Positions 1,631 to 52,080 of a DNA stretch of 64,000 bases are shown here, one piece after another. The position numbers were made by a program, and so were the translations under genes. The notes under the pieces are model-generated. The model was not told where the DNA came from, made no database searches, and worked only from the letters and a program-made list of their open reading frames with translations. The DNA is taken from the IMG/VR virus record IMGVR_UViG_3300035180_001778, positions 286,470-350,469 of that record, one strand, 5' to 3'. Numbering within the stretch: position 1 is the first letter of the stretch; every line of letters begins with the position of its first letter.

Positions 1631-1639
1631 ATGACCCCC

Positions 1640-2524
1640 ATGATGAAGACCAGCACGATTGACCCCCGCGTCGAAGAGGCTCAGAAGGTTCTCCAGGACG
1701 GAATCGCCGCGCTAGTCGCTGGTGCCGACTGGAAGAAGTACCTGGAATTTCAAGCGAAATTCCACAACTACTCGCTCTGCAACACCTTCTGGCTGATGGC
1801 TCAGGCCATGCGCCGAGGGATCGAGATCAGCCAGTTCGCCGGGTTCAACACTTGGCGTGACGCGAAGCGCCAGGTCCGCAAGGGCGAGAAGGCGTTCCAG
1901 GTGCTCGCCCCCCTTCGCTACAAGCGCGAGGTCGTGAAGGACGGCACCAAGGAAAACGTATTCGGAATCCGTGGGTTCCGCGTCGCATCAACCTTCGACA
2001 TCTCGCAGACGGACGGCCCGGCCCTCCCCGAGATCGTGTCGCAGCTCCAGGGAACGAGCGAGGAGATCGAGGCGGTCTACGCCTCTCTCGTCAAGTTCTC
2101 CACGGAGATCAACAAGGTGCCCGTCCGTCGGGAAGTGCTCCCGGCCGGCACCAACGGGTACTACAGCCGCGAGGGCTTCATCGTGGTGTCGAGCACCATC
2201 AGTGGGCTCCAGGCGCTCAAGACGCTGGCTCACGAGATCGCCCACTCGATCCTGCACGAGAAGCTGGCCGACTGCCATGACCAGGTGTACCGCGAAGTCG
2301 AGGCCGAATCCACGGCCTTCGTGGTGCTCCACTCCCTCGGGTTCAGCGCGGAGTCCTACTCCTTCGGGTACGTGGCCGGCTGGTCCAAGGGTGACGCCAA
2401 GATCGTCAAGGAGGTCGCCGAGCGTGTCCAGCGGGCTGCGAAGACCATCCTCGGCTCCCTCGTGAAGCCGAAGACCTGGCAAGAGCACCTCGACGACGAC
2501 ATCCTCGAAGACAAGGCGGCGTGA
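1640..2524 (+). CDS. ArdC-like antirestriction protein (ssDNA-binding N-terminus + zincin metallopeptidase)
   Basis: FHNYS..N..L…AGF.TW….R.V.KGEK…FDISQT, HEIAH, EVEAES..FVV, Y..GW motifs. Confidence 0.85.
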   Translation: MMKTSTIDPRVEEAQKVLQDGIAALVAGADWKKYLEFQAKFHNYSLCNTFWLMAQAMRRGIEISQFAGFNTWRDAKRQVRKGEKAFQVLAPLRYKREVVKDGTKENVFGIRGFRVASTFDISQTDGPALPEIVSQLQGTSEEIEAVYASLVKFSTEINKVPVRREVLPAGTNGYYSREGFIVVSSTISGLQALKTLAHEIAHSILHEKLADCHDQVYREVEAESTAFVVLHSLGFSAESYSFGYVAGWSKGDAKIVKEVAERVQRAAKTILGSLVKPKTWQEHLDDDILEDKAA

Positions 2525-8213: not shown

Positions 8214-8426
8214 CTACTCAAGATCGTCGAGGAGATGCTCCCAGCCGGTCGGTCTCTTGTCCGCCAGCTCTTGGAGCATCCCGATCTGGAATTCTTTCGC
8301 TTCTTCCTTCGTGATGTTTCCACTGGCGTACTCGTACTCGACGCAGGGACACGAGCGGAACATGATCCGCCCGTTGCAAACGGGGCAGCGGACGGGAGGG
8401 CAATTCTTCCGTCCGTCTCGCATCAT
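8214..8426 (-). CDS. Cys-rich small protein with W-tail
   Basis: CPVC..CPC; ATGA overlap with upstream gene; ends RPTGWEHLLDDLE. Confidence 0.75.
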   Translation of the reverse strand: MMRDGRKNCPPVRCPVCNGRIMFRSCPCVEYEYASGNITKEEAKEFQIGMLQELADKRPTGWEHLLDDLE

Positions 8427-17587: not shown

Positions 17588-17842
17588 TCAAGAAAAGATA
17601 TCGTCTTCGAGTAGGACTGTCCAAGCGGTCGGCCTGTGGGTTCTGTCCCACTCCCACAAAAGCTTGAGGTCGAGGTGAATGGGCTGGAAGCCCTGCTTGT
17701 CCCGCTGCTTGCTGACGAAGAAGCTCATCGTGCTGGAGGACGGCATGGGGGTGTCTCGATGTAGACGGACCACCATTGAGGTGTCGTACAAGATCGAGGC
17801 ACCGCCCGGAATGCGGTCATTCTGGTTAGGCACCGATCTCAT
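17588..17842 (-). CDS. hypothetical protein with W-tail
   Basis: Ends RPTAWTVLLEDDIFS. Confidence 0.65.
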   Translation of the reverse strand: MRSVPNQNDRIPGGASILYDTSMVVRLHRDTPMPSSSTMSFFVSKQRDKQGFQPIHLDLKLLWEWDRTHRPTAWTVLLEDDIFS

Positions 17843-18444: not shown

Positions 18445-19851
18445 TTGAACCACAAAACGACCACCCGAAAGATCACGATGCCCGAAGGTAACCCCCAACT
18501 CTGTGAGATTTGGGAGACATCCGATGCCCTGCGAGGATCGACAATCCGTTGTGTTGTCGGTGATGTAGCTCCGAACGCCATCACGTTCGTGAGCCTGGCA
18601 GGGAACCGTACGCGCATCCCGGCGATCCGCATGGCCGGCTGGCATTTCGTGCAGAGCCCTCCCCCCAATCTGATGTCCTGCTCGCGTCGTGGGTGCCGCC
18701 TCCCGGGGCTTCTACGTTTCGAGCGAGGGATAACCCCCGAATGGGTCTGCGCTCGGCACATGCCCGTTGGAACCCGAGCCACGCTCGACCTCGTGCCGCG
18801 TCCCAACCAAGACCCTCCCACTCTCGAAACCCCGATCATCATCTGCGCCGCCTGTGAGGGTGACAACCCCGTCCAGGATGCGAACGTTCTCATTGGTCGG
18901 GACGACATCGAGATGTGGTTCTGCCAGCGGTGCAACAACGTCTGGGGGATCGTTCTCGAAGAGAACACGCGCGACAGGGCTGTACCGCTTACATCGCGTG
19001 AACTCGCCACATGGTACAGCTCCCGAGTGCGGCTCCTCGTGGAAGCCATGGAACGGGGCGGCCGACACCCGACCCATGTCGAGGTGTCGGCGACTGTGTG
19101 GACTTTGCTGTATGATGCACACAACGAAGCCACTTTCATGTTGTACGGGATTCCTGCCCGGCGAGTCCTGGACTTTCTATCTCCAGACACTCGGCGCGCA
19201 ATGGTGACGTTGCAGACTCGGGACGCGATTCGCTCGGCGGCTCTTCCTGTGTCGCGGCTCGGCAGCGTCCCGAACCGCTCTCCAGAGATCACGGGCAATA
19301 ACCCGCTCCTGACCTGGGTTCAGGAGCAACGCACCATTCGAGCCCTCCCTCAGCCGACCCCTATGCCCCCTCCCGAGAAGACAGTCAGGTTGGAAGAACA
19401 GATGGGGATCCCTACGATGGGGTCCACATGGGTCAACCGTGGGACTGGGGTGCTCATCGAGGTGACGGGCCTATCGTTTGCCGAAGGCACACAACAGATC
19501 ATTCAGTTCAGAGCCGTTCTGGTGGCTGAATCGAATATCCGAGAACCTCACTCGCGTCTTGGCTATGATGACTTCGTCACGCTGCATCGCGTCTGGCACA
19601 ACGACGGAAAGACCGAGATGCCCTACTTGGACCTCGGTCTACAGCTCGGCGACGAATGGATTCAGAACCATAATCGGGTCGTGGTCGAGATCCTGCACAT
19701 CGACCACAAGAAGGAGACCGTCTCGGTCTACGAGAAAGACACGAAACGTCGCTCCGCCCTGAAGATGCGAGAGTTCGCACCTGGCGGTAACTGGCGGAAG
19801 ATCGTCCGTCGCACGGCCTTTGAAGCCCTGGAGGATGACGACTTCGGCTGA
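18445..19851 (+). CDS. multi-domain hypothetical protein with acidic tail
   Basis: 468 aa with Cys clusters; ends RRTAFEALEDDDFG. Confidence 0.8.
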   Translation: MNHKTTTRKITMPEGNPQLCEIWETSDALRGSTIRCVVGDVAPNAITFVSLAGNRTRIPAIRMAGWHFVQSPPPNLMSCSRRGCRLPGLLRFERGITPEWVCARHMPVGTRATLDLVPRPNQDPPTLETPIIICAACEGDNPVQDANVLIGRDDIEMWFCQRCNNVWGIVLEENTRDRAVPLTSRELATWYSSRVRLLVEAMERGGRHPTHVEVSATVWTLLYDAHNEATFMLYGIPARRVLDFLSPDTRRAMVTLQTRDAIRSAALPVSRLGSVPNRSPEITGNNPLLTWVQEQRTIRALPQPTPMPPPEKTVRLEEQMGIPTMGSTWVNRGTGVLIEVTGLSFAEGTQQIIQFRAVLVAESNIREPHSRLGYDDFVTLHRVWHNDGKTEMPYLDLGLQLGDEWIQNHNRVVVEILHIDHKKETVSVYEKDTKRRSALKMREFAPGGNWRKIVRRTAFEALEDDDFG

Positions 19852-19852
19852 G

Positions 19853-20101
19853 CTACTCGAAGTCCACGTCGAGCTGGTCGAGCAGGGTCTTCCTCGGCGG
19901 CTTAGCAGTGGATCGCCAAGTGTCGGTTTGGGGGAGATCCGCTTCGAATACCGTACCCGCACCGAAGACTCGTTTGACCTTGCCTCCTTTGATCGTGCAT
20001 TCCACGACCTGTGCCGAGGAGCCATTGACCGTCAGCACGTAATACAACTTGCCGTCGGGGCTCTTGTAGACAGTCTTGGGCTTGATCTCGTCTTTGGGCA
20101 T
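19853..20101 (-). CDS. hypothetical protein with tail variant
   Basis: Ends PRKTLLDQLDVDFE. Confidence 0.75.
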   Translation of the reverse strand: MPKDEIKPKTVYKSPDGKLYYVLTVNGSSAQVVECTIKGGKVKRVFGAGTVFEADLPQTDTWRSTAKPPRKTLLDQLDVDFE

Positions 20102-20537: not shown

Positions 20538-20701
20538 TCGGCTGCGGGGTAGGAGTTGTGGTGGGTGACCGCGGTATTCAAGACGACGCGAGACTTCCCC
20601 GTGTAGCGCTCCTTGCCGTGCTCGTTCACCTCGACCTCATACTCGGCGTAGGAGTTGCTCGACACATGAGAGCGCTGGACGAACCAGTAGGTCTCTTTCA
20701 C
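20525..20701 (-). CDS. hypothetical protein
   Basis: 58 aa; GTGA overlap with upstream stop. Confidence 0.6.
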   Translation of the reverse strand: MKETYWFVQRSHVSSNSYAEYEVEVNEHGKERYTGKSRVVLNTAVTHHNSYPAAECPK

Positions 20702-21114
20702 AGATCCTCCACAAGAAGGGCTTCCCAGGCTGTGGGTTGGATCTTCGTCCAAAGGCCCCTCTCGACCGAGCCTCGCCGCAGCCCAAACGTCTGCCCGGTT
20801 TTGAGATTGACCCCTTGGGCCAAGCCTCCGAAGGTCCCACCCTGGTATTCCTGCGTGATCCGGATCGGTCCCTTCACCCTCTCCTGCCACAGCTCCCCGA
20901 TCTTCGGCTCATCGATGCCAGGGATGCCGGCGGAATTCCCCGCACACTTCGCACACCAGATGTTCTCGAAGTCTCGGATCCTGGGGTTCAAGCTGAAGGT
21001 GATCTCCTTCGGTGCCCCGCACGCATTGCAGTTGGGGGAGTGTCGAGGCAGCTCCGGGATCGAGTCGTGCTTCGGGGGGTATTCCCGGAAGGACTTTTTC
21101 ACGTCGTTGACCAT
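20698..21114 (-). CDS. CxxC protein with W-tail
   Basis: CNACG…WCAKC; ends QPTAWEALLVEDL. Confidence 0.75.
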   Translation of the reverse strand: MVNDVKKSFREYPPKHDSIPELPRHSPNCNACGAPKEITFSLNPRIRDFENIWCAKCAGNSAGIPGIDEPKIGELWQERVKGPIRITQEYQGGTFGGLAQGVNLKTGQTFGLRRGSVERGLWTKIQPTAWEALLVEDL

Positions 21115-24307: not shown

Positions 24308-24706
24308 TCACAGCTCGTCGTCGAGGCGGTCCCAGGCAGCTCGCGGGCCGTTGAGTTCCGCTTTGATCTTGTCCGTCCGCACCGCAATCTCATCGAGTCG
24401 GGCCTGAAGGTTCTCCGCTCTACGGTCAAAGTCCTCCAACCTCTCATCGAGAGGTTCTGTGGGAGTCTCCAGAACCGGCGGGGCAGGGATGGCGCAGTAG
24501 TGGGGCTGGACACGGGGCCACCACTTCACATTCTCGTGTTTGGCGGCCAACCCGACAGTACATTCGTGGCACTGCCACCCATCTCTTCGAGTGTGCTTGT
24601 AGTATTCAGCACGCTGTTTCACCCGGGCGATATCCTCGTAGCGCCCGTATGCCCAGGTGCCAAACCATCCCAGAAGGAACACCCCCAACACAATGACGAG
24701 ATACAT
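24308..24706 (-). CDS. membrane-anchored protein with W-tail
   Basis: TM helix, CxxC, coiled coil; ends RAAWDRLDDEL. Confidence 0.75.
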   Translation of the reverse strand: MYLVIVLGVFLLGWFGTWAYGRYEDIARVKQRAEYYKHTRRDGWQCHECTVGLAAKHENVKWWPRVQPHYCAIPAPPVLETPTEPLDERLEDFDRRAENLQARLDEIAVRTDKIKAELNGPRAAWDRLDDEL

Positions 24707-26583: not shown

Positions 26584-27117
26584 CTAGAAACGAACCTGCG
26601 CGAGGGCCGCAGCGACCCCATCGACGAGCGTCTGATTGCGCGTGAGCTTCCCCTGGGTGAGGGTGCTGTGGGGGTCCGCGCCATCACCACCGAGGTTCTT
26701 CGCGATGATCGAGCCGACCGTGGTCGTCTTGAATCCGAGCCCGAAGGCATCCGAGAACGCGTCCCCGGGGAAGGTGATCCCGGTCGACGTCGCGAAGCAG
26801 GTCTTGTTGCCGTGGTAGACGATCGCGATCACCGCGAGATCCAGGATGACGTCCCCACCGTAGGGCCCGACGACGCCGGACTCGATGCCGATGTAGAGGT
26901 CCCCATCCTCGGGCCCGTCGAGCTGCGCCTGGGTGGCACGGTGCAAGGCACCCTTCATGGTCTCCTCGAACCCGTAGGGCTGCTCGTTGACCGCCGAAGC
27001 GACCTTCACCCCGACGACCTCGACACCCTTGAAGCCGACCCGCCCGCAGGCCTCCTGAACAGCTTGAATCTTGATCTTGCTCGTCGTACCCAAAACGATC
27101 TTCATGCTCATCTCCAT
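26584..27117 (-). CDS. YjjX-like non-canonical purine NTPase (ITPase/XTPase)
   Basis: LGTTS.IKIQAV…SAVNEQP.G.EET..GA.HRA…IGIESG. Confidence 0.85.
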   Translation of the reverse strand: MEMSMKIVLGTTSKIKIQAVQEACGRVGFKGVEVVGVKVASAVNEQPYGFEETMKGALHRATQAQLDGPEDGDLYIGIESGVVGPYGGDVILDLAVIAIVYHGNKTCFATSTGITFPGDAFSDAFGLGFKTTTVGSIIAKNLGGDGADPHSTLTQGKLTRNQTLVDGVAAALAQVRF

Positions 27118-27614
27118 CAGGTGTGAAAGGCTGCCTTCAGACGGGAAAGCAGGGTGTAGTCTTCGACCCCCGCATCCTTCATCAGCTCAAGGAAGCCAGG
27201 GAGTTCCTTGAGGTACATCTTGAACTTGGACTGATCCGCAGACTGCCGGCTGTGCTCGCCGTTCGCGATCCGGTCCGCCAGCTTGAGGATCGCTGCCTTC
27301 TGGATCAGCCGGATCTTCGCGTAGGCCGAAGCGTTGCGCTCCTTGCGGTTCTTGCCGACACCCGAGACAGCGAAGACCAGGAGAGCTACATCAGCTCCGA
27401 ACTCCTGTTCGAGAACTCGGAGGTCCGCACCCTCGACATCCTCGTACCAGTCGTGCAGCCAGGCCGCGGTGAGGAAGATATCCCCATAGCCGGCATCCCA
27501 GAGGATCTGACGAACCGCAGCGAGGTGGTGGCTGTAGGGGAGGTCCCCATACAACTGCTTCGCATGGGCCTCGCAGGCGAAGTCTCGGGCTTTCCGTTCC
27601 TGGTCGCTAATCAT
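27117..27614 (-). CDS. HD-domain small alarmone hydrolase-like (RelA/SpoT HD, Mesh1-like)
   Basis: AH..Q…PY..H..AV…AAWLHD.YED…KLADRI.N. Confidence 0.85.
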   Translation of the reverse strand: MISDQERKARDFACEAHAKQLYGDLPYSHHLAAVRQILWDAGYGDIFLTAAWLHDWYEDVEGADLRVLEQEFGADVALLVFAVSGVGKNRKERNASAYAKIRLIQKAAILKLADRIANGEHSRQSADQSKFKMYLKELPGFLELMKDAGVEDYTLLSRLKAAFHT

Positions 27615-28558: not shown

Positions 28559-28626
28559 CTACAGTCTGAGCCACTTGGAAATCAACCCCAACCTCCTGGT
28601 TGATCCCCAAGGCCTCGCTCCTGTAG
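28559..28626. promoter_or_regulatory. divergent promoter pair
   Basis: GGTTGATT-N16-TGTAG (minus) and GGTTGATC-N16-TGTAG (plus), both N8 to ATG. Confidence 0.85.
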
Positions 28627-28633
28627 GTACACC

Positions 28634-28840
28634 ATGCCGAAGAACCCATTCGATACGCTGAATCCCGAGGAGAAATCCGCCCTCGTCGCCTACGCCAAGG
28701 AGCACGGACGCACCTGGAAATCCAGCCTCCGGGACGACTGGTACAACGCCTCGGCAGAGTCCATCCTTCACCGGCTCCGGAACAAGGAAGACTTCGGTCC
28801 GACGGGGCTCATCAACGTCCGGCTCCCCAAGGAGAAGTGA
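28634..28840 (+). CDS. hypothetical protein
   Basis: 68 aa at exact promoter spacing. Confidence 0.8.
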   Translation: MPKNPFDTLNPEEKSALVAYAKEHGRTWKSSLRDDWYNASAESILHRLRNKEDFGPTGLINVRLPKEK

Positions 28841-29118
28841 TCATGGAACGCTGCATCTGGTCTCCAGGCAACGCGAAGTCACAGCCGAAGTTATTCCGGC
28901 ATGACCTGTGGTATGCCAAGACCTCGTTCTTCTCGACGATGGGTCCGTACACGCTGGCCGTGTATGTCTACAGGGACATGGTCGGGGGCCACATCTTCAA
29001 GGACGACCCCGTGAGCATTTACGACATTCCCCACAACATCGCGCTCAAGGCTTCCGTCGAGGAAGCCCAAGCTCTCCTCGAAGCCCAAGCTCTCAAGTAC
29101 CTCAGCAACGATCGGTGA
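28837..29118 (+). CDS. hypothetical protein
   Basis: 93 aa; GTGA overlap. Confidence 0.7.
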   Translation: MIMERCIWSPGNAKSQPKLFRHDLWYAKTSFFSTMGPYTLAVYVYRDMVGGHIFKDDPVSIYDIPHNIALKASVEEAQALLEAQALKYLSNDR

Positions 29119-29139: not shown

Positions 29140-29820
29140 ATGGGTTACAGCATCTCGGTTCCGACGCGATCCCCCAAGCTCCAAGCGAAGATGCTGAGCT
29201 TCCTGGAGACGAACTACAGGAGGTGGCCCGACGTCAACAACGACGGGAAAAGCCACGCCTACGCCAGGGGTCCCACGGACGACCTGTCCTACGGCGCTGC
29301 CAAGAACCGGATCGGGTTCGACTACGGGCCCCTCAGCGGCGGGGAACGTGAGTACATCTACGCCGTCCTCCGATGGATGGCGATCCAGGTCGGGGTGCGC
29401 AAGGCGAAGTTCACCAAGAACGAGATCACCCCGAACATCCTCCCCCGCCACATGCCGTACACCCTCTACGACGGGTACGACGCCATGCCCATCATCCTCG
29501 TCCCCAACGTGACGGCCGCCAACAAGCTGCCCAAGAGACAGCGCTGGGCAGCCACCGATTGCTGGGGGATCCGGATCAGCAAGGAAGCCGATCAATCCTC
29601 GCTCCTCTTCGACATGCCGTCGGAGATCCTCCAGGCCGTCAATGATGACGTGAGGAACACGATGGGCATCTGAGAGAATCTCACCCACCAAGAGCGCAAG
29701 GCCTGGCACGACAAGTACAAGGCCATCTGTCTCAAGCACATGAAGCCCGAGCTGGACAAGATCATGGGGACGATCCGCGATGAGACGAAGCGCCTCCAGC
29801 TCCTCTGGGACCAGCTCTAG
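29140..29820 (+). CDS. hypothetical protein with in-frame UGA (29671-29673) and 48-aa extension ending LWDQL
   Basis: …MGI-TGA-ENLTHQERKAWHDKYKAICLKHMKPELDKIMGTIRDETKRLQLLWDQL-TAG. Confidence 0.7.
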
Positions 29821-30119
29821 ATCATCTCCCCCAACAGCAGGGCGCCGTTGAAGCTGTCCCGAGCCTGAAGCTCCTGGAGCTTCAGCTCGCAGAGACGCTT
29901 GGCCTCTTCCGCCGAAGTCTTCTTGCGAAGCTCGCGAGGGAGATACCATTCGGTCCGAGACCCGACGAAGACCTCGGTCTGCACGTAATCGCCCGTCTGC
30001 CAGGCGTCGACCGTGACGGACATCGTGTACTGCCCATCGAAAGCCAGGTACACGGCGACGGTGTTGAAACCGAAGAACTCGGCGTGGGTGTCTTTGGTAA
30101 CTTCGATCCAGGTAGCCAT
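29817..30119 (-). CDS. hypothetical protein
   Basis: 100-aa ORF MATWIEVTK…. Confidence 0.7.
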   Translation of the reverse strand: MATWIEVTKDTHAEFFGFNTVAVYLAFDGQYTMSVTVDAWQTGDYVQTEVFVGSRTEWYLPRELRKKTSAEEAKRLCELKLQELQARDSFNGALLLGEMI

Positions 30120-30189
30120 GGGGATCAACCTCTTGCCGTGAGGGCTACGATGGCCTTGGTGTGGAGCGTCTGAAACTTCTCCTGCGCTT

Positions 30190-31204: not shown

Positions 31205-31495
31205 CTAGAGGTCGTCTTCCTTGAGGAGGCGCTTCCAGGCGGAGGCTGGGACAGCTCGTTGTTTCTGGAAGCCCCCGGGCATGACGACGTAGATGAGGGC
31301 CTGATCACTGTCGTAGAGCCGGGCCATGGAGCTGTTGTAGGCGCAGAGGTTGGCGACGTAGCCGAGGGCCACACGGTTGAGGTCTTCAACTTCGGCTTCG
31401 AGCTGGGCCTGTGTGAGGGGCGACTCGGGCTGCGTCTCGAACTCCACACGGAAGACTCGGGCCGGGACATCGAGGGTACAGCAGACGTTGGCCAT
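31205..31495 (-). CDS. hypothetical protein with W-tail
   Basis: Ends ASAWKRLLKEDDL. Confidence 0.75.
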   Translation of the reverse strand: MANVCCTLDVPARVFRVEFETQPESPLTQAQLEAEVEDLNRVALGYVANLCAYNSSMARLYDSDQALIYVVMPGGFQKQRAVPASAWKRLLKEDDL

Positions 31496-47358: not shown

Positions 47359-47562
47359 ATGGCCATCAAACCGCACGATTACGGTGCCGATGGGGGTTGC
47401 AATCGCTGCTCCCACGACTCGTTCTCCTCGTATTCCTATGGGTGCGAGGAGAACCCCAAGAAGATTCTCGACCGGCGTCTAGGGATGGTCGAGAATCCCA
47501 AATATCAAGCTCCTACTGTCTGGGAGCGCCTCGACAAGGACCTCTCCGACACGAAGGAATGA
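47359..47562 (+). CDS. Cys small protein with W-tail
   Basis: CNRC; ends APTVWERLDKDLSDTKE. Confidence 0.75.
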   Translation: MAIKPHDYGADGGCNRCSHDSFSSYSYGCEENPKKILDRRLGMVENPKYQAPTVWERLDKDLSDTKE

Positions 47563-51355: not shown

Positions 51356-51778
51356 ATGACAGGACGTGCGGGACAGGTCATGGGCGAGACGGCAGAGCTT
51401 CTCGCGTCGCTCTGCTTCGAGGTGTGTCCCAACAGGATGCCATCCTGTGTGACTTCAGTACGGCGTGCAACACAAGAAGAGGACCACCAAGGGATTGACC
51501 TCGTGGTCGTCATCGACGCCGGCATCTTGAATGTTCAGGTGAAGTCGAGCTGGAAGCGAGCCCAAGAGTTCAAGAAGAAGCACCCCGACATCCCCGTGCT
51601 TGTGGTTCACCCCGAGGACTCCGAGGAGCACGTTCGCAGGAACCTCTTGAGCATTCTGGGGCAAGAGCGTGCGAAGCTCGTTCCGGGGTACACAGCGAAG
51701 CCGCCGCGTGGGGACAGAGGCAAAACGACGAAGGCGATCCCCCTGATGTTCTCTTTGGGGGATCGCCTTCGTCGTTAG
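51356..51778 (+). CDS. PD-(D/E)XK nuclease-like protein
   Basis: ED.QGIDL…NVQVKS; start uncertain. Confidence 0.65.
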   Translation: MTGRAGQVMGETAELLASLCFEVCPNRMPSCVTSVRRATQEEDHQGIDLVVVIDAGILNVQVKSSWKRAQEFKKKHPDIPVLVVHPEDSEEHVRRNLLSILGQERAKLVPGYTAKPPRGDRGKTTKAIPLMFSLGDRLRR

Positions 51779-52080
51779 AAGTCGTCGTCTTCGTCGAGCA
51801 CTTCCCACGCTGTGGGAGGCTTCACTTCTCCGAAGGGGCGCCAGAGGATGCGTCCCTTGCGGAAGACCGCAACGTCAACAAGCCCGAGATCCCATCTCTG
51901 ATACCACAGGGTATTGCCGAGAGTCTGAGCCTCCAGGAGGAGGCTGAAGCGGCCCATCATCTGGGGCACCACCAGATCCCCATAGTCGAGGCCCACAGAC
52001 CTCCAAGGAAGACGCCCGACAAGCAGTGCCCTCCCTTTCCCTTGGAGGCGGACTTTGACCGAGTAGCTTCGGATGGGCAT
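51775..52080 (-). CDS. hypothetical protein with W-tail
   Basis: Ends PPTAWEVLDEDDDF. Confidence 0.7.
   Translation of the reverse strand: MPIRSYSVKVRLQGKGRALLVGRLPWRSVGLDYGDLVVPQMMGRFSLLLEAQTLGNTLWYQRWDLGLVDVAVFRKGRILWRPFGEVKPPTAWEVLDEDDDF

What the first reader, a model, noticed from the sequence alone, without database searches (positions are those of the whole stretch)
29140..29820. In-frame UGA hides a 48-aa extension that ends in the shared W-tail
Seen: after TGA 29671-73 the frame stays open for 48 codons with typical codon usage and no separate SD. It reads MGI*ENLTHQERKAWHDKY…RLQLLWDQL-TAG. Trp at the stop gives a natural-looking GIWENLT. Inference: UCA-tRNA readthrough would switch the W-tail on or off for this protein. 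A TGG-to-TGA nonsense mutation or base-call error is an equally simple explanation.
Basis: partly seen in the sequence, partly recalled or inferred. Interest (0 to 1): 0.72.

Follow-up and report, generated by a model that had tools for sequence, protein, structure and literature searches.

The report
Real in-frame UGA before conserved helix
In a 350-kb phage genome, one accessory gene has a genuine TGA stop just before its conserved C-terminal helix, and since the phage also carries a tRNA that reads UGA, the full protein may be made by read-through, although a plain nonsense mutation is almost as likely.

Summary
ORF 29140-29673 (177 aa) ends at TGA 29671-73, and the frame stays open for 48 codons to TAG 29818-20.

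The extension is coding. Its codon score is 0.81 per codon, against a maximum of 0.27 in 149 null post-stop extensions. It also matches the conserved C-terminal helix (IRxEhxRLDxLW) of an uncharacterised huge-phage protein family (E 9e-8).

All 28 distinct complete homologs (≤46% identical) are uninterrupted. The stop falls in a variable linker, and none of them has Trp there.

TGA is not a sequencing error. Four separate run assemblies and one IMG/VR contig are identical.

The genome uses the standard code: TGA ends 67% of my gene calls. This is the only stop in 350 kb with unexplained coding sequence on both sides.

The phage has a canonical 73-nt tRNA(UCA) at 15692-15764. It sits behind the same promoter-like motif as the operon holding this gene. 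No TrpRS, release factor or SECIS-like structure was found.

Best reading (0.45): a lineage-specific UGA, partly suppressed by the phage tRNA. That would give mostly a truncated globular domain and some full-length protein. A plain nonsense lesion is nearly as likely (0.40).

The "shared W-tail" claim is only half right. The Trp is the family's own invariant residue.

The parts
29140..29673 (+). Upstream part of the gene: 177 codons plus TGA. It encodes the globular alpha/beta domain of an uncharacterised huge-phage protein family with an invariant N-terminus MGYSI.
   Evidence: ORF list and translation. Matches positions 1-158 of a family HMM built without the window, E 2.5e-52. Homologs.
29671..29673 (+). 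In-frame TGA, followed by G. It lies in the variable linker just before the C-terminal helix.
   Evidence: Sequence. Identical in four run assemblies and one IMG/VR contig. The column is variable and has no Trp in homologs. In the AF2 model of a homolog, the equivalent site is the loop at residues 176-181.
29674..29820 (+). Extension of 48 codons plus TAG. It is homologous to the family's long C-terminal helix, which ends in IRxEhxRLDxLW.
   Evidence: HMM positions 178-220, E 8.9e-8. Tail-only profile score 39.7 bits, 11th of 29, against an intact-member median of 33.6. Codon score 0.81, GC3 0.90. Helix 182-225 in the model.
15692..15764 (+). tRNA with anticodon UCA: 73 nt, short variable arm, discriminator A73, no encoded CCA. 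It is a candidate UGA suppressor.
   Evidence: ARAGORN. Rfam tRNA model 64.7 bits, full length. It is not built like tRNA-Sec. It lies 36 kb from the 39-gene tRNA array, on the other strand.
15653..15680 (+). Promoter-like motif GTTGATC-N14-[CG]TGTA[GAC], ending 11 nt before the tRNA's 5' end.
   Evidence: Found 57 times in the genome, against 0-1 in shuffles. 36 sites lie within 20 nt upstream of a start codon. Sequence.
28599..28626 (+). The same promoter-like motif, 7 nt before the first gene of the three-gene + strand operon that ends with the interrupted gene.
28634..29118 (+). Two small upstream genes of the operon (28634-28840 and 28837-29118), tightly packed with the interrupted gene. 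Their function is unknown.
   Evidence: Gene calls. No conserved synteny with the homologs' loci.
29817..30128 (-). Convergent gene. Its stop codon overlaps the extension's TAG within the palindrome CTAG, so the extension fills the whole gap between the two genes.
   Evidence: Sequence and gene calls. No terminator-like site in 29674-29817.

Best explanation
The window is the last 64 kb of a 350-kb huge-phage genome that uses the standard code.

The gene at 29140-29820 belongs to an uncharacterised family found only on huge-phage contigs. The family has a globular alpha/beta domain, a variable linker and a long C-terminal helix.

In this lineage a sense codon in the linker has become TGA. The DNA really reads TGA.

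Termination at that codon gives a 177-aa protein without the helix. The 226-aa full-length form can arise only if the UGA is decoded.

The phage supplies a plausible decoder. Its own tRNA(UCA) has a canonical cloverleaf and sits behind the same promoter-like motif as the gene's operon.

I infer partial, probably low-level suppression. Most product would be truncated and a minority full-length. The inserted residue is unknown.

Shown: the stop, its reality, the homology and intactness of the extension, the tRNA, and the shared promoter motif.

Inferred: that the tRNA is charged and expressed, that it suppresses this UGA, and that the full-length product matters. Whether this is an adaptive switch or a lesion tolerated because a suppressor is present cannot be told.
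For: - TGA is identical in four separately assembled runs (depths 5-35) and in an IMG/VR contig.
- The extension is collinear and in frame with the family's C-terminus (E 8.9e-8). It keeps the five nearly invariant tail residues E, R, L, L, W.
- The extension scores like an intact member: 39.7 bits against a median of 33.6. Its codon score is 0.81, about 4.5 sd above null extensions.
- It has no start signal of its own.
- Every complete homolog, even the shortest at 171-183 aa, keeps the tail. So the helix is integral to the family.
- tRNA(UCA) scores 64.7 bits against the Rfam tRNA model, full length.
- The same bipartite motif lies upstream of the tRNA and of the operon.
- Phage tRNA(UCA) genes that suppress UGA, including one with A73, have been shown to work (PMC12636597).
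Against: - All 28 distinct complete homologs have a sense codon, so the stop is not a conserved feature.
- It is the only such case in 350 kb.
- TGA ends 297 of 442 called genes. It is not avoided in any region or gene class, and there are no extra backup stops after it. The genome therefore shows no adaptation to efficient UGA suppression.
- No TrpRS/TyrRS-type synthetase and no release factor were found.
- There is no stimulatory RNA structure after the stop (z -0.08).
- The +4 base is G, which is unremarkable.
- The tRNA's isotype is ambiguous.
- No close relative exists that could test conservation of the stop.
Confidence: 0.45

Rival explanations
1. Plain nonsense lesion. A recent point mutation turned a linker codon into TGA. 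The gene is now dead, or works as a helix-less 177-aa fragment. The tRNA(UCA) serves some other purpose, or none, and any read-through is incidental.
For: - Every homolog is uninterrupted.
- The case is unique in the genome.
- The genome is not adapted to UGA suppression.
- No stimulatory signal was found.
- The gene is an accessory gene without conserved neighbours, so its loss may be tolerated.
- TGA is the commonest stop in this GC-rich genome, so a random nonsense codon would most often be TGA anyway.
Against: - The extension shows no decay. There are no further stops or frameshifts, the five nearly invariant tail residues are kept, the profile score is above the family median, and the codon score is in the top 4% of real gene windows.
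- The TGA is the consensus in four samples plus a JGI assembly.
- If the tRNA(UCA) in the same genome works at all, it must read this codon to some degree.
Confidence: 0.4
2. Sequencing or assembly error: the true codon is a sense codon such as TGG.
For: None was found. This was only a prior possibility for a metagenome assembly.
Against: Logan contigs from four runs (word depths 18, 9.5, 35 and 5) show zero differences over 4,001 bases. An IMG/VR contig shows zero differences over 6,531 bases. The database's own gene call also stops there (P0001).
Confidence: 0.02
3. Specialised recoding of UGA: either selenocysteine insertion or a genome-wide code change (code 4 or 25).
For: ARAGORN labels the tRNA 'SeC', but only because of its tca anticodon.
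Against: - The tRNA is 73 nt with a short variable arm, and Rfam's general tRNA model wins over the others in its clan.
- There is no hairpin after the UGA and no Rfam hit.
- No SelA was found.
- TGA is the main terminator, and no other in-frame TGA exists.
Confidence: 0.02

Closest known systems
Stop-codon-recoded phages with code-switch machinery (code 4 or 15; suppressor tRNA, sometimes with an aaRS and a release factor)
   Same: A phage-encoded suppressor tRNA, here with anticodon UCA, together with an in-frame stop inside a conserved phage gene. Background from PMC10746230 and PMC12636597.
   Different: There is one in-frame TGA rather than many. TGA is still the main terminator (67%). 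No TrpRS or RF1 was found. The affected gene is a small accessory gene in a probable early-type promoter region, not a late structural or lysis gene.
Qbeta A1 read-through protein (from my own knowledge): a leaky UGA at the end of the coat gene gives a minor extended protein
   Same: Two products could come from one ORF through UGA read-through, with the extension adding a functional C-terminal part.
   Different: In Qbeta the stop is the conserved, natural end of a complete protein, and a host tRNA decodes it. Here the stop interrupts a protein that is continuous in every homolog, and the candidate decoder is phage-encoded. The stop could not be shown to be conserved.
Suppressor-dependent nonsense (amber or opal) mutants of laboratory phages (from my own knowledge)
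   Same: A single nonsense codon lies in an otherwise intact gene, and the full-length product depends on a suppressor tRNA.
   Different: Here both the nonsense codon and the suppressor lie in the same natural phage genome. In the laboratory case the suppressor is in a permissive host.
Ordinary nonsense pseudogene
   Same: The stop is lineage-specific and sits where all homologs have sense codons.
   Different: There is no secondary decay downstream, and a matching suppressor tRNA is present.

Membership tests
Stop-codon-recoded (code 4-like) phage | Many genes carry in-frame TGA | tested here: not met
   Only one stop of any kind has unexplained coding sequence on both sides. The second candidate proved to be two complete genes, a metallopeptidase and a clamp loader.
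Stop-codon-recoded (code 4-like) phage | The reassigned codon is rare or absent as a terminator | tested here: not met
   TGA ends 297 of 442 called genes. Its share is 45-75% in every 25-kb bin.
Stop-codon-recoded (code 4-like) phage | Phage-encoded suppressor tRNA for the codon | tested here: met
   tRNA(UCA) at 15692-15764, 64.7 bits on the Rfam tRNA model.
Stop-codon-recoded (code 4-like) phage | Accessory code-change genes (TrpRS, RF1) | tested here: not met
   PF00579, PF00472 and PF03462 gave no match in the 350-kb record. The record is estimated to be 73% complete, so absence is not proven.
Programmed stop-codon read-through (Qbeta A1 type) | The stop codon is conserved among relatives | tested here: not met
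   All 28 distinct complete homologs have sense codons. All are at most 46% identical, and no close relative is available.
Programmed stop-codon read-through (Qbeta A1 type) | The extension is under coding constraint | tested here: met
   Homology E 8.9e-8, all nearly invariant tail residues kept, codon score 0.81. A recent lesion would look the same.
Programmed stop-codon read-through (Qbeta A1 type) | Leaky context or stimulatory downstream structure | tested here: not met
   RNA fold z-score -0.08. The +4 base is G, with no distinctive context. No Rfam element.
Programmed stop-codon read-through (Qbeta A1 type) | Both the short and the extended protein are made | not testable with these tools
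   This needs proteomics or a reporter assay.
Selenoprotein gene | tRNA-Sec architecture, a SECIS hairpin after the UGA, and sel genes | tested here: not met
   The tRNA is a canonical 73-nt tRNA. There is no hairpin and no SelA.
Nonsense pseudogene | Premature stop where homologs are continuous | tested here: met
Nonsense pseudogene | Secondary decay: further stops, frameshifts, or loss of conserved residues or codon bias | tested here: not met
   None was found. A very recent lesion would also pass this test.
The genome's shared C-terminal W-tail ([KR]-P-T-A-W-E-x-L-L-D-D-x-F) | Match to the tail profile over positions -5 to +3 around the Trp | tested here: not met
   Total score -2.3, with 63 of 442 genes scoring higher. 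Only the W-D-Q-L half matches (+13.7); the upstream half fails (-15.9). The 21 clear members score 9 to 27. Tails of homologs in other phages do not match either.

The most novel reading that the evidence does not exclude
This standard-code huge phage keeps one gene behind a UGA on purpose. Its own tRNA(UCA), transcribed from the same promoter class, sets how much full-length, helix-bearing protein is made relative to the bare globular domain. That would be a natural single-gene, suppressor-gated switch. It could also be a snapshot of the very first step toward stop-codon reassignment.
Probability: 0.18. Interest if true: 0.7.

Novelty: new variant of a known kind. Interest (0 to 1): 0.45.

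Why it matters
Phage suppressor tRNAs are known mainly from genomes that have already been recoded throughout. How recoding begins is an open question.

This genome still ends two thirds of its genes with TGA. Yet it carries both a UGA-reading tRNA and exactly one conserved gene that needs that tRNA. It could be the earliest 'ambiguous' stage of recoding, or a natural suppressor-gated gene.

It also gives a clean test case. One tryptic junction peptide would show both the read-through and the residue inserted.

If the stop is only a lesion, the finding is ordinary. The practical lesson is that the current annotation of this gene (160 or 177 aa) omits the family's conserved C-terminus.

Tried and rejected
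- **Paralogs of the tail or the N-domain in the genome:** none found (phmmer and hmmsearch on six-frame ORFs).
- **Function of the family:** no Pfam hit above the curated cut-off, and no PHROG hit. The AlphaFold2 model of a homolog is confident (pLDDT 94.9). Foldseek against PDB, AFDB clusters and BFVD gave nothing significant, and VIA-align gave a best Z of 4.2.
- **Homodimer prediction for a full-length homolog:** no verdict. The chains folded poorly without an alignment, so it is evidence neither way.
- **Conserved gene neighbourhood among homolog loci:** none.
- **Close relatives of the phage:** none. This was tried through the gene itself, the nearby HD-domain gene, the tRNA with its anticodon masked, and the phage collection. 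Only the same phage came back.
- **Isotype of the tRNA by similarity:** the nearest matches are a mix of tRNA-Trp, Thr, Arg and Lys. The D-arm is Trp-like. The first two acceptor-stem pairs and A73 are Thr-like. The result is ambiguous.
- **Selenocysteine, a terminator in the gap, and an RNA element:** all rejected.
- **Second in-frame TGA candidate at genome 216593 (- strand):** rejected. It separates two complete genes.
- **Alternative genetic code:** I did not translate the gene under another code, because the genome does not show one. The stop was written as X in alignments.

Full report
**Context.** The window is the last 64 kb of a single 350,469-bp contig (59.7% GC). The contig carries 39 ordinary tRNA genes, a tmRNA and one tRNA with anticodon UCA. 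The record is a viral one, linear, with an estimated completeness of 73%. It is a huge phage. My own codon-usage gene caller found 442 genes. Of these, 297 end in TGA, 105 in TAG and 40 in TAA. The genome therefore uses the standard code, with TGA as its main terminator.

**The observation.** ATG is at 29140 and the in-frame TGA at 29671-73. Then come 48 sense codons and TAG at 29818-20. An open frame of 48 codons is not remarkable here. About half of all TGA-ended genes stay open for 30 codons or more. What is remarkable is the content of the extension.
- It scores 0.81 per codon with GC3 0.90. The 149 other post-stop extensions average -0.45 (sd 0.28, max 0.27). Only 4% of 48-codon windows inside real genes score as high.
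- The first possible start codon lies 22 codons in. It lacks the TGTAG-type motif that precedes most genes here.
- The long antisense ORF is a shadow (score -0.22).
- The extension's TAG overlaps the stop of the convergent gene 29817-30128 within CTAG. So the extension fills the whole gap, and no terminator-like site lies in it.

**Homology.** The 177-aa part finds ten database proteins of 173-248 aa. The best is 46% identical. Twenty-five further loci in IMG/VR and JGI metagenomes also encode relatives. Several sit on contigs of 270-510 kb.
- All 28 distinct complete homologs are uninterrupted. Each ends 2-10 residues (rarely more) after a conserved IRxEhxRLDxLW motif.
- I built an HMM from homologs alone and searched all six-frame ORFs of the genome. 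It hits exactly two pieces. The 177-aa part matches positions 1-158 (E 2.5e-52), and the extension matches positions 178-220 (E 8.9e-8). The two are collinear and in the same frame.
- The extension keeps the five nearly invariant tail residues.
- Under a tail-only profile it scores 39.7 bits. That is 11th of 29, above the leave-one-out median of 33.6 for intact members. No decay can be detected.
- The stop's column lies in a variable linker. 23 homologs have a residue there, 13 different kinds, none of them Trp.

**Structure.** An AlphaFold2 model of the homolog L011 is confident (pLDDT 94.9, pTM 0.91). It shows an alpha/beta domain followed by one long helix at residues 182-225. The stop maps to the loop just before that helix. 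Termination at the TGA would therefore remove exactly the terminal helix. Even the shortest family members keep this helix. No fold or family match gives a function.

**Is the TGA real?** Logan contigs of four runs, labelled as four samples and four studies, cover the site at word depths 18, 9.5, 35 and 5. They show no difference over 4,001 bases. An IMG/VR contig from a JGI assembly is identical over 6,531 bases. A base-call error is excluded. Contigs hide minor alleles, so polymorphism remains untested. Identical sequences also carry no evolutionary information.

**Is it part of a wider recoding?** No.
- A scan from my gene calls found one candidate: this gene.
- An independent scan looked at every stop with coding-like sequence for 40 codons on both sides. 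It found 21 such stops. All but two are followed by an ATG within 18 codons. The second exception separates a complete metallopeptidase from a complete clamp loader that starts at GTG.
- TGA is not avoided in any genome region, codon-score class or length class.
- TGA-ended genes have no excess of nearby backup stops, and the next stop is usually another TGA.
- No TrpRS/TyrRS-type synthetase, release factor or SelA was found.
- No RNA structure follows the stop (z -0.08), and no Rfam element is present.

**The tRNA.** The gene at 15692-15764 is a full-length canonical tRNA (64.7 bits against a threshold of 29). Its anticodon loop reads UUUCAAA, the variable arm is short and the discriminator is A73. 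ARAGORN's 'SeC' label reflects only the anticodon.
- Its isotype is unclear. The nearest paralog in the genome is tRNA-Thr(UGU) at 75%. Outside the genome, the matches are a mix of tRNA-Trp, Thr, Arg and Lys.
- Published work shows that phage tRNA(UCA) genes do suppress UGA with Trp, including one with A73 (PMC12636597). Trp is therefore possible but not shown.
- A bipartite motif, GTTGATC-N14-[CG]TGTA[GAC], occurs 57 times in the genome against 0-1 in shuffles. It mostly lies 7-10 nt before start codons, and it is concentrated at the two ends of the contig.
- One copy ends 11 nt before the tRNA. Another lies 7 nt before the first gene of the three-gene operon that ends with the interrupted gene.
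- Because the motif also precedes a tRNA gene, it is a promoter rather than a translation signal. It suggests that the tRNA and the gene belong to one expression class. That last step is inference.

**Weighing the explanations.**
- If the tRNA works, it must decode this UGA at some rate. The undecayed extension then yields the family's normal full-length protein.
- The lack of any adaptation of the other 297 TGA terminators argues that suppression is weak. The truncated domain would then be the main product.
- Against a programmed device: the stop is unique to this lineage, it is the only one in the genome, and it has no special context.
- No relative closer than 46% identity could be found for this gene, and none closer than 47% for the nearby HD-domain gene. 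The one comparison that would decide the matter, conservation of the TGA amid synonymous change, cannot be made.
- My estimates are 0.45 for 'real stop, partly suppressed by the phage tRNA'. About 0.18 of that is a selected switch. I give 0.40 to a plain lesion and a few percent to error or specialised recoding.

**The 'shared W-tail'.** At least 21 otherwise unrelated proteins of this genome end in a motif close to [KR]-P-T-A-W-E-x-L-L-D-D-x-F. Synonymous codons vary among the copies, so the conservation is at the peptide level. The extension's last residues are LLWDQL. They share only the W-[DE]-x-L end with that motif and fail the P-T-A half (score -2.3, against 9 to 27 for members). The Trp is the family's own invariant residue in phages that show no such tail. 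So 'switching the W-tail on or off' is not supported as stated. What read-through would switch is the family's terminal helix.

**Verdict.** It is a moderately interesting single case that one proteomic or reporter experiment could settle.

Noticed in passing
window 8214-8426(-), 8423-9577(-), 9597-10094(-), 11243-11533(+), 17588-17833(-), 18760-19851(+), 19853-20101(-), 20698-21114(-), 24308-24706(-), 31205-31495(-), 47359-47562(+), 51775-51996(-), 1631-2524(+); also genome 692-1081(+), 14009-14584(-), 47016-47462(+), 79941-80450(-) and others: At least 21 otherwise unrelated proteins (67-384 aa) end in a shared C-terminal peptide close to [KR]-P-T-A-W-E-x-L-L-D-D-x-[FL]. Synonymous codons differ among the copies, so it is a peptide motif and not a DNA repeat. 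It looks like a docking tail for one common partner, comparable in style to acidic/aromatic SSB or clamp-binding tails. The partner is unknown.
   Followed up: partly
57 sites genome-wide, e.g. window 11915, 12222, 14112, 15653, 28599, 30481 (+) and 10986, 26584, 27649, 30473, 32479, 32845 (-): The bipartite motif GTTGATC-N14-[CG]TGTA[GAC] occurs 57 times, against 0-1 in shuffles. It mostly ends 7-10 nt before a start codon and is concentrated in the first 75 kb and last 75 kb of the contig. It is probably a phage promoter class that produces leaderless or near-leaderless mRNAs. One copy drives the tRNA(UCA).
   Followed up: partly
window 16062-16379 (-): A PTH2-type peptidyl-tRNA hydrolase gene (Pfam E 2.6e-9) lies convergent to the tRNA(UCA), about 300 nt downstream. 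The phage also encodes a tmRNA (genome 249709-250060, - strand). Together with a UGA suppressor, these could form a ribosome-rescue set that copes with read-through products. This is speculation.
   Followed up: no
window 15692-15764 versus genome 242624-265701: The tRNA(UCA) stands alone on the + strand, 36 kb away from the array of 39 tRNA genes plus tmRNA, which all lie on the - strand. It has no encoded CCA. This suggests separate regulation or separate acquisition.
   Followed up: no
window 26584-27117 (-) and 27117-27614 (-): Judged by eye from their sequences, two nucleotide-metabolism-like genes lie just upstream: an ITPase/Maf-like protein and an HD-domain hydrolase. The HD gene's nearest relatives in IMG/VR are only 39-47% identical, which confirms that this phage has no close relative in that collection.
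   Followed up: partly
window 29140-29673: The public protein collection holds this gene as a 160-aa product that starts at an internal Met and ends at the TGA (P0001). Existing annotation therefore misses both the invariant MGYSI N-terminus and the conserved C-terminal helix.
   Followed up: yes
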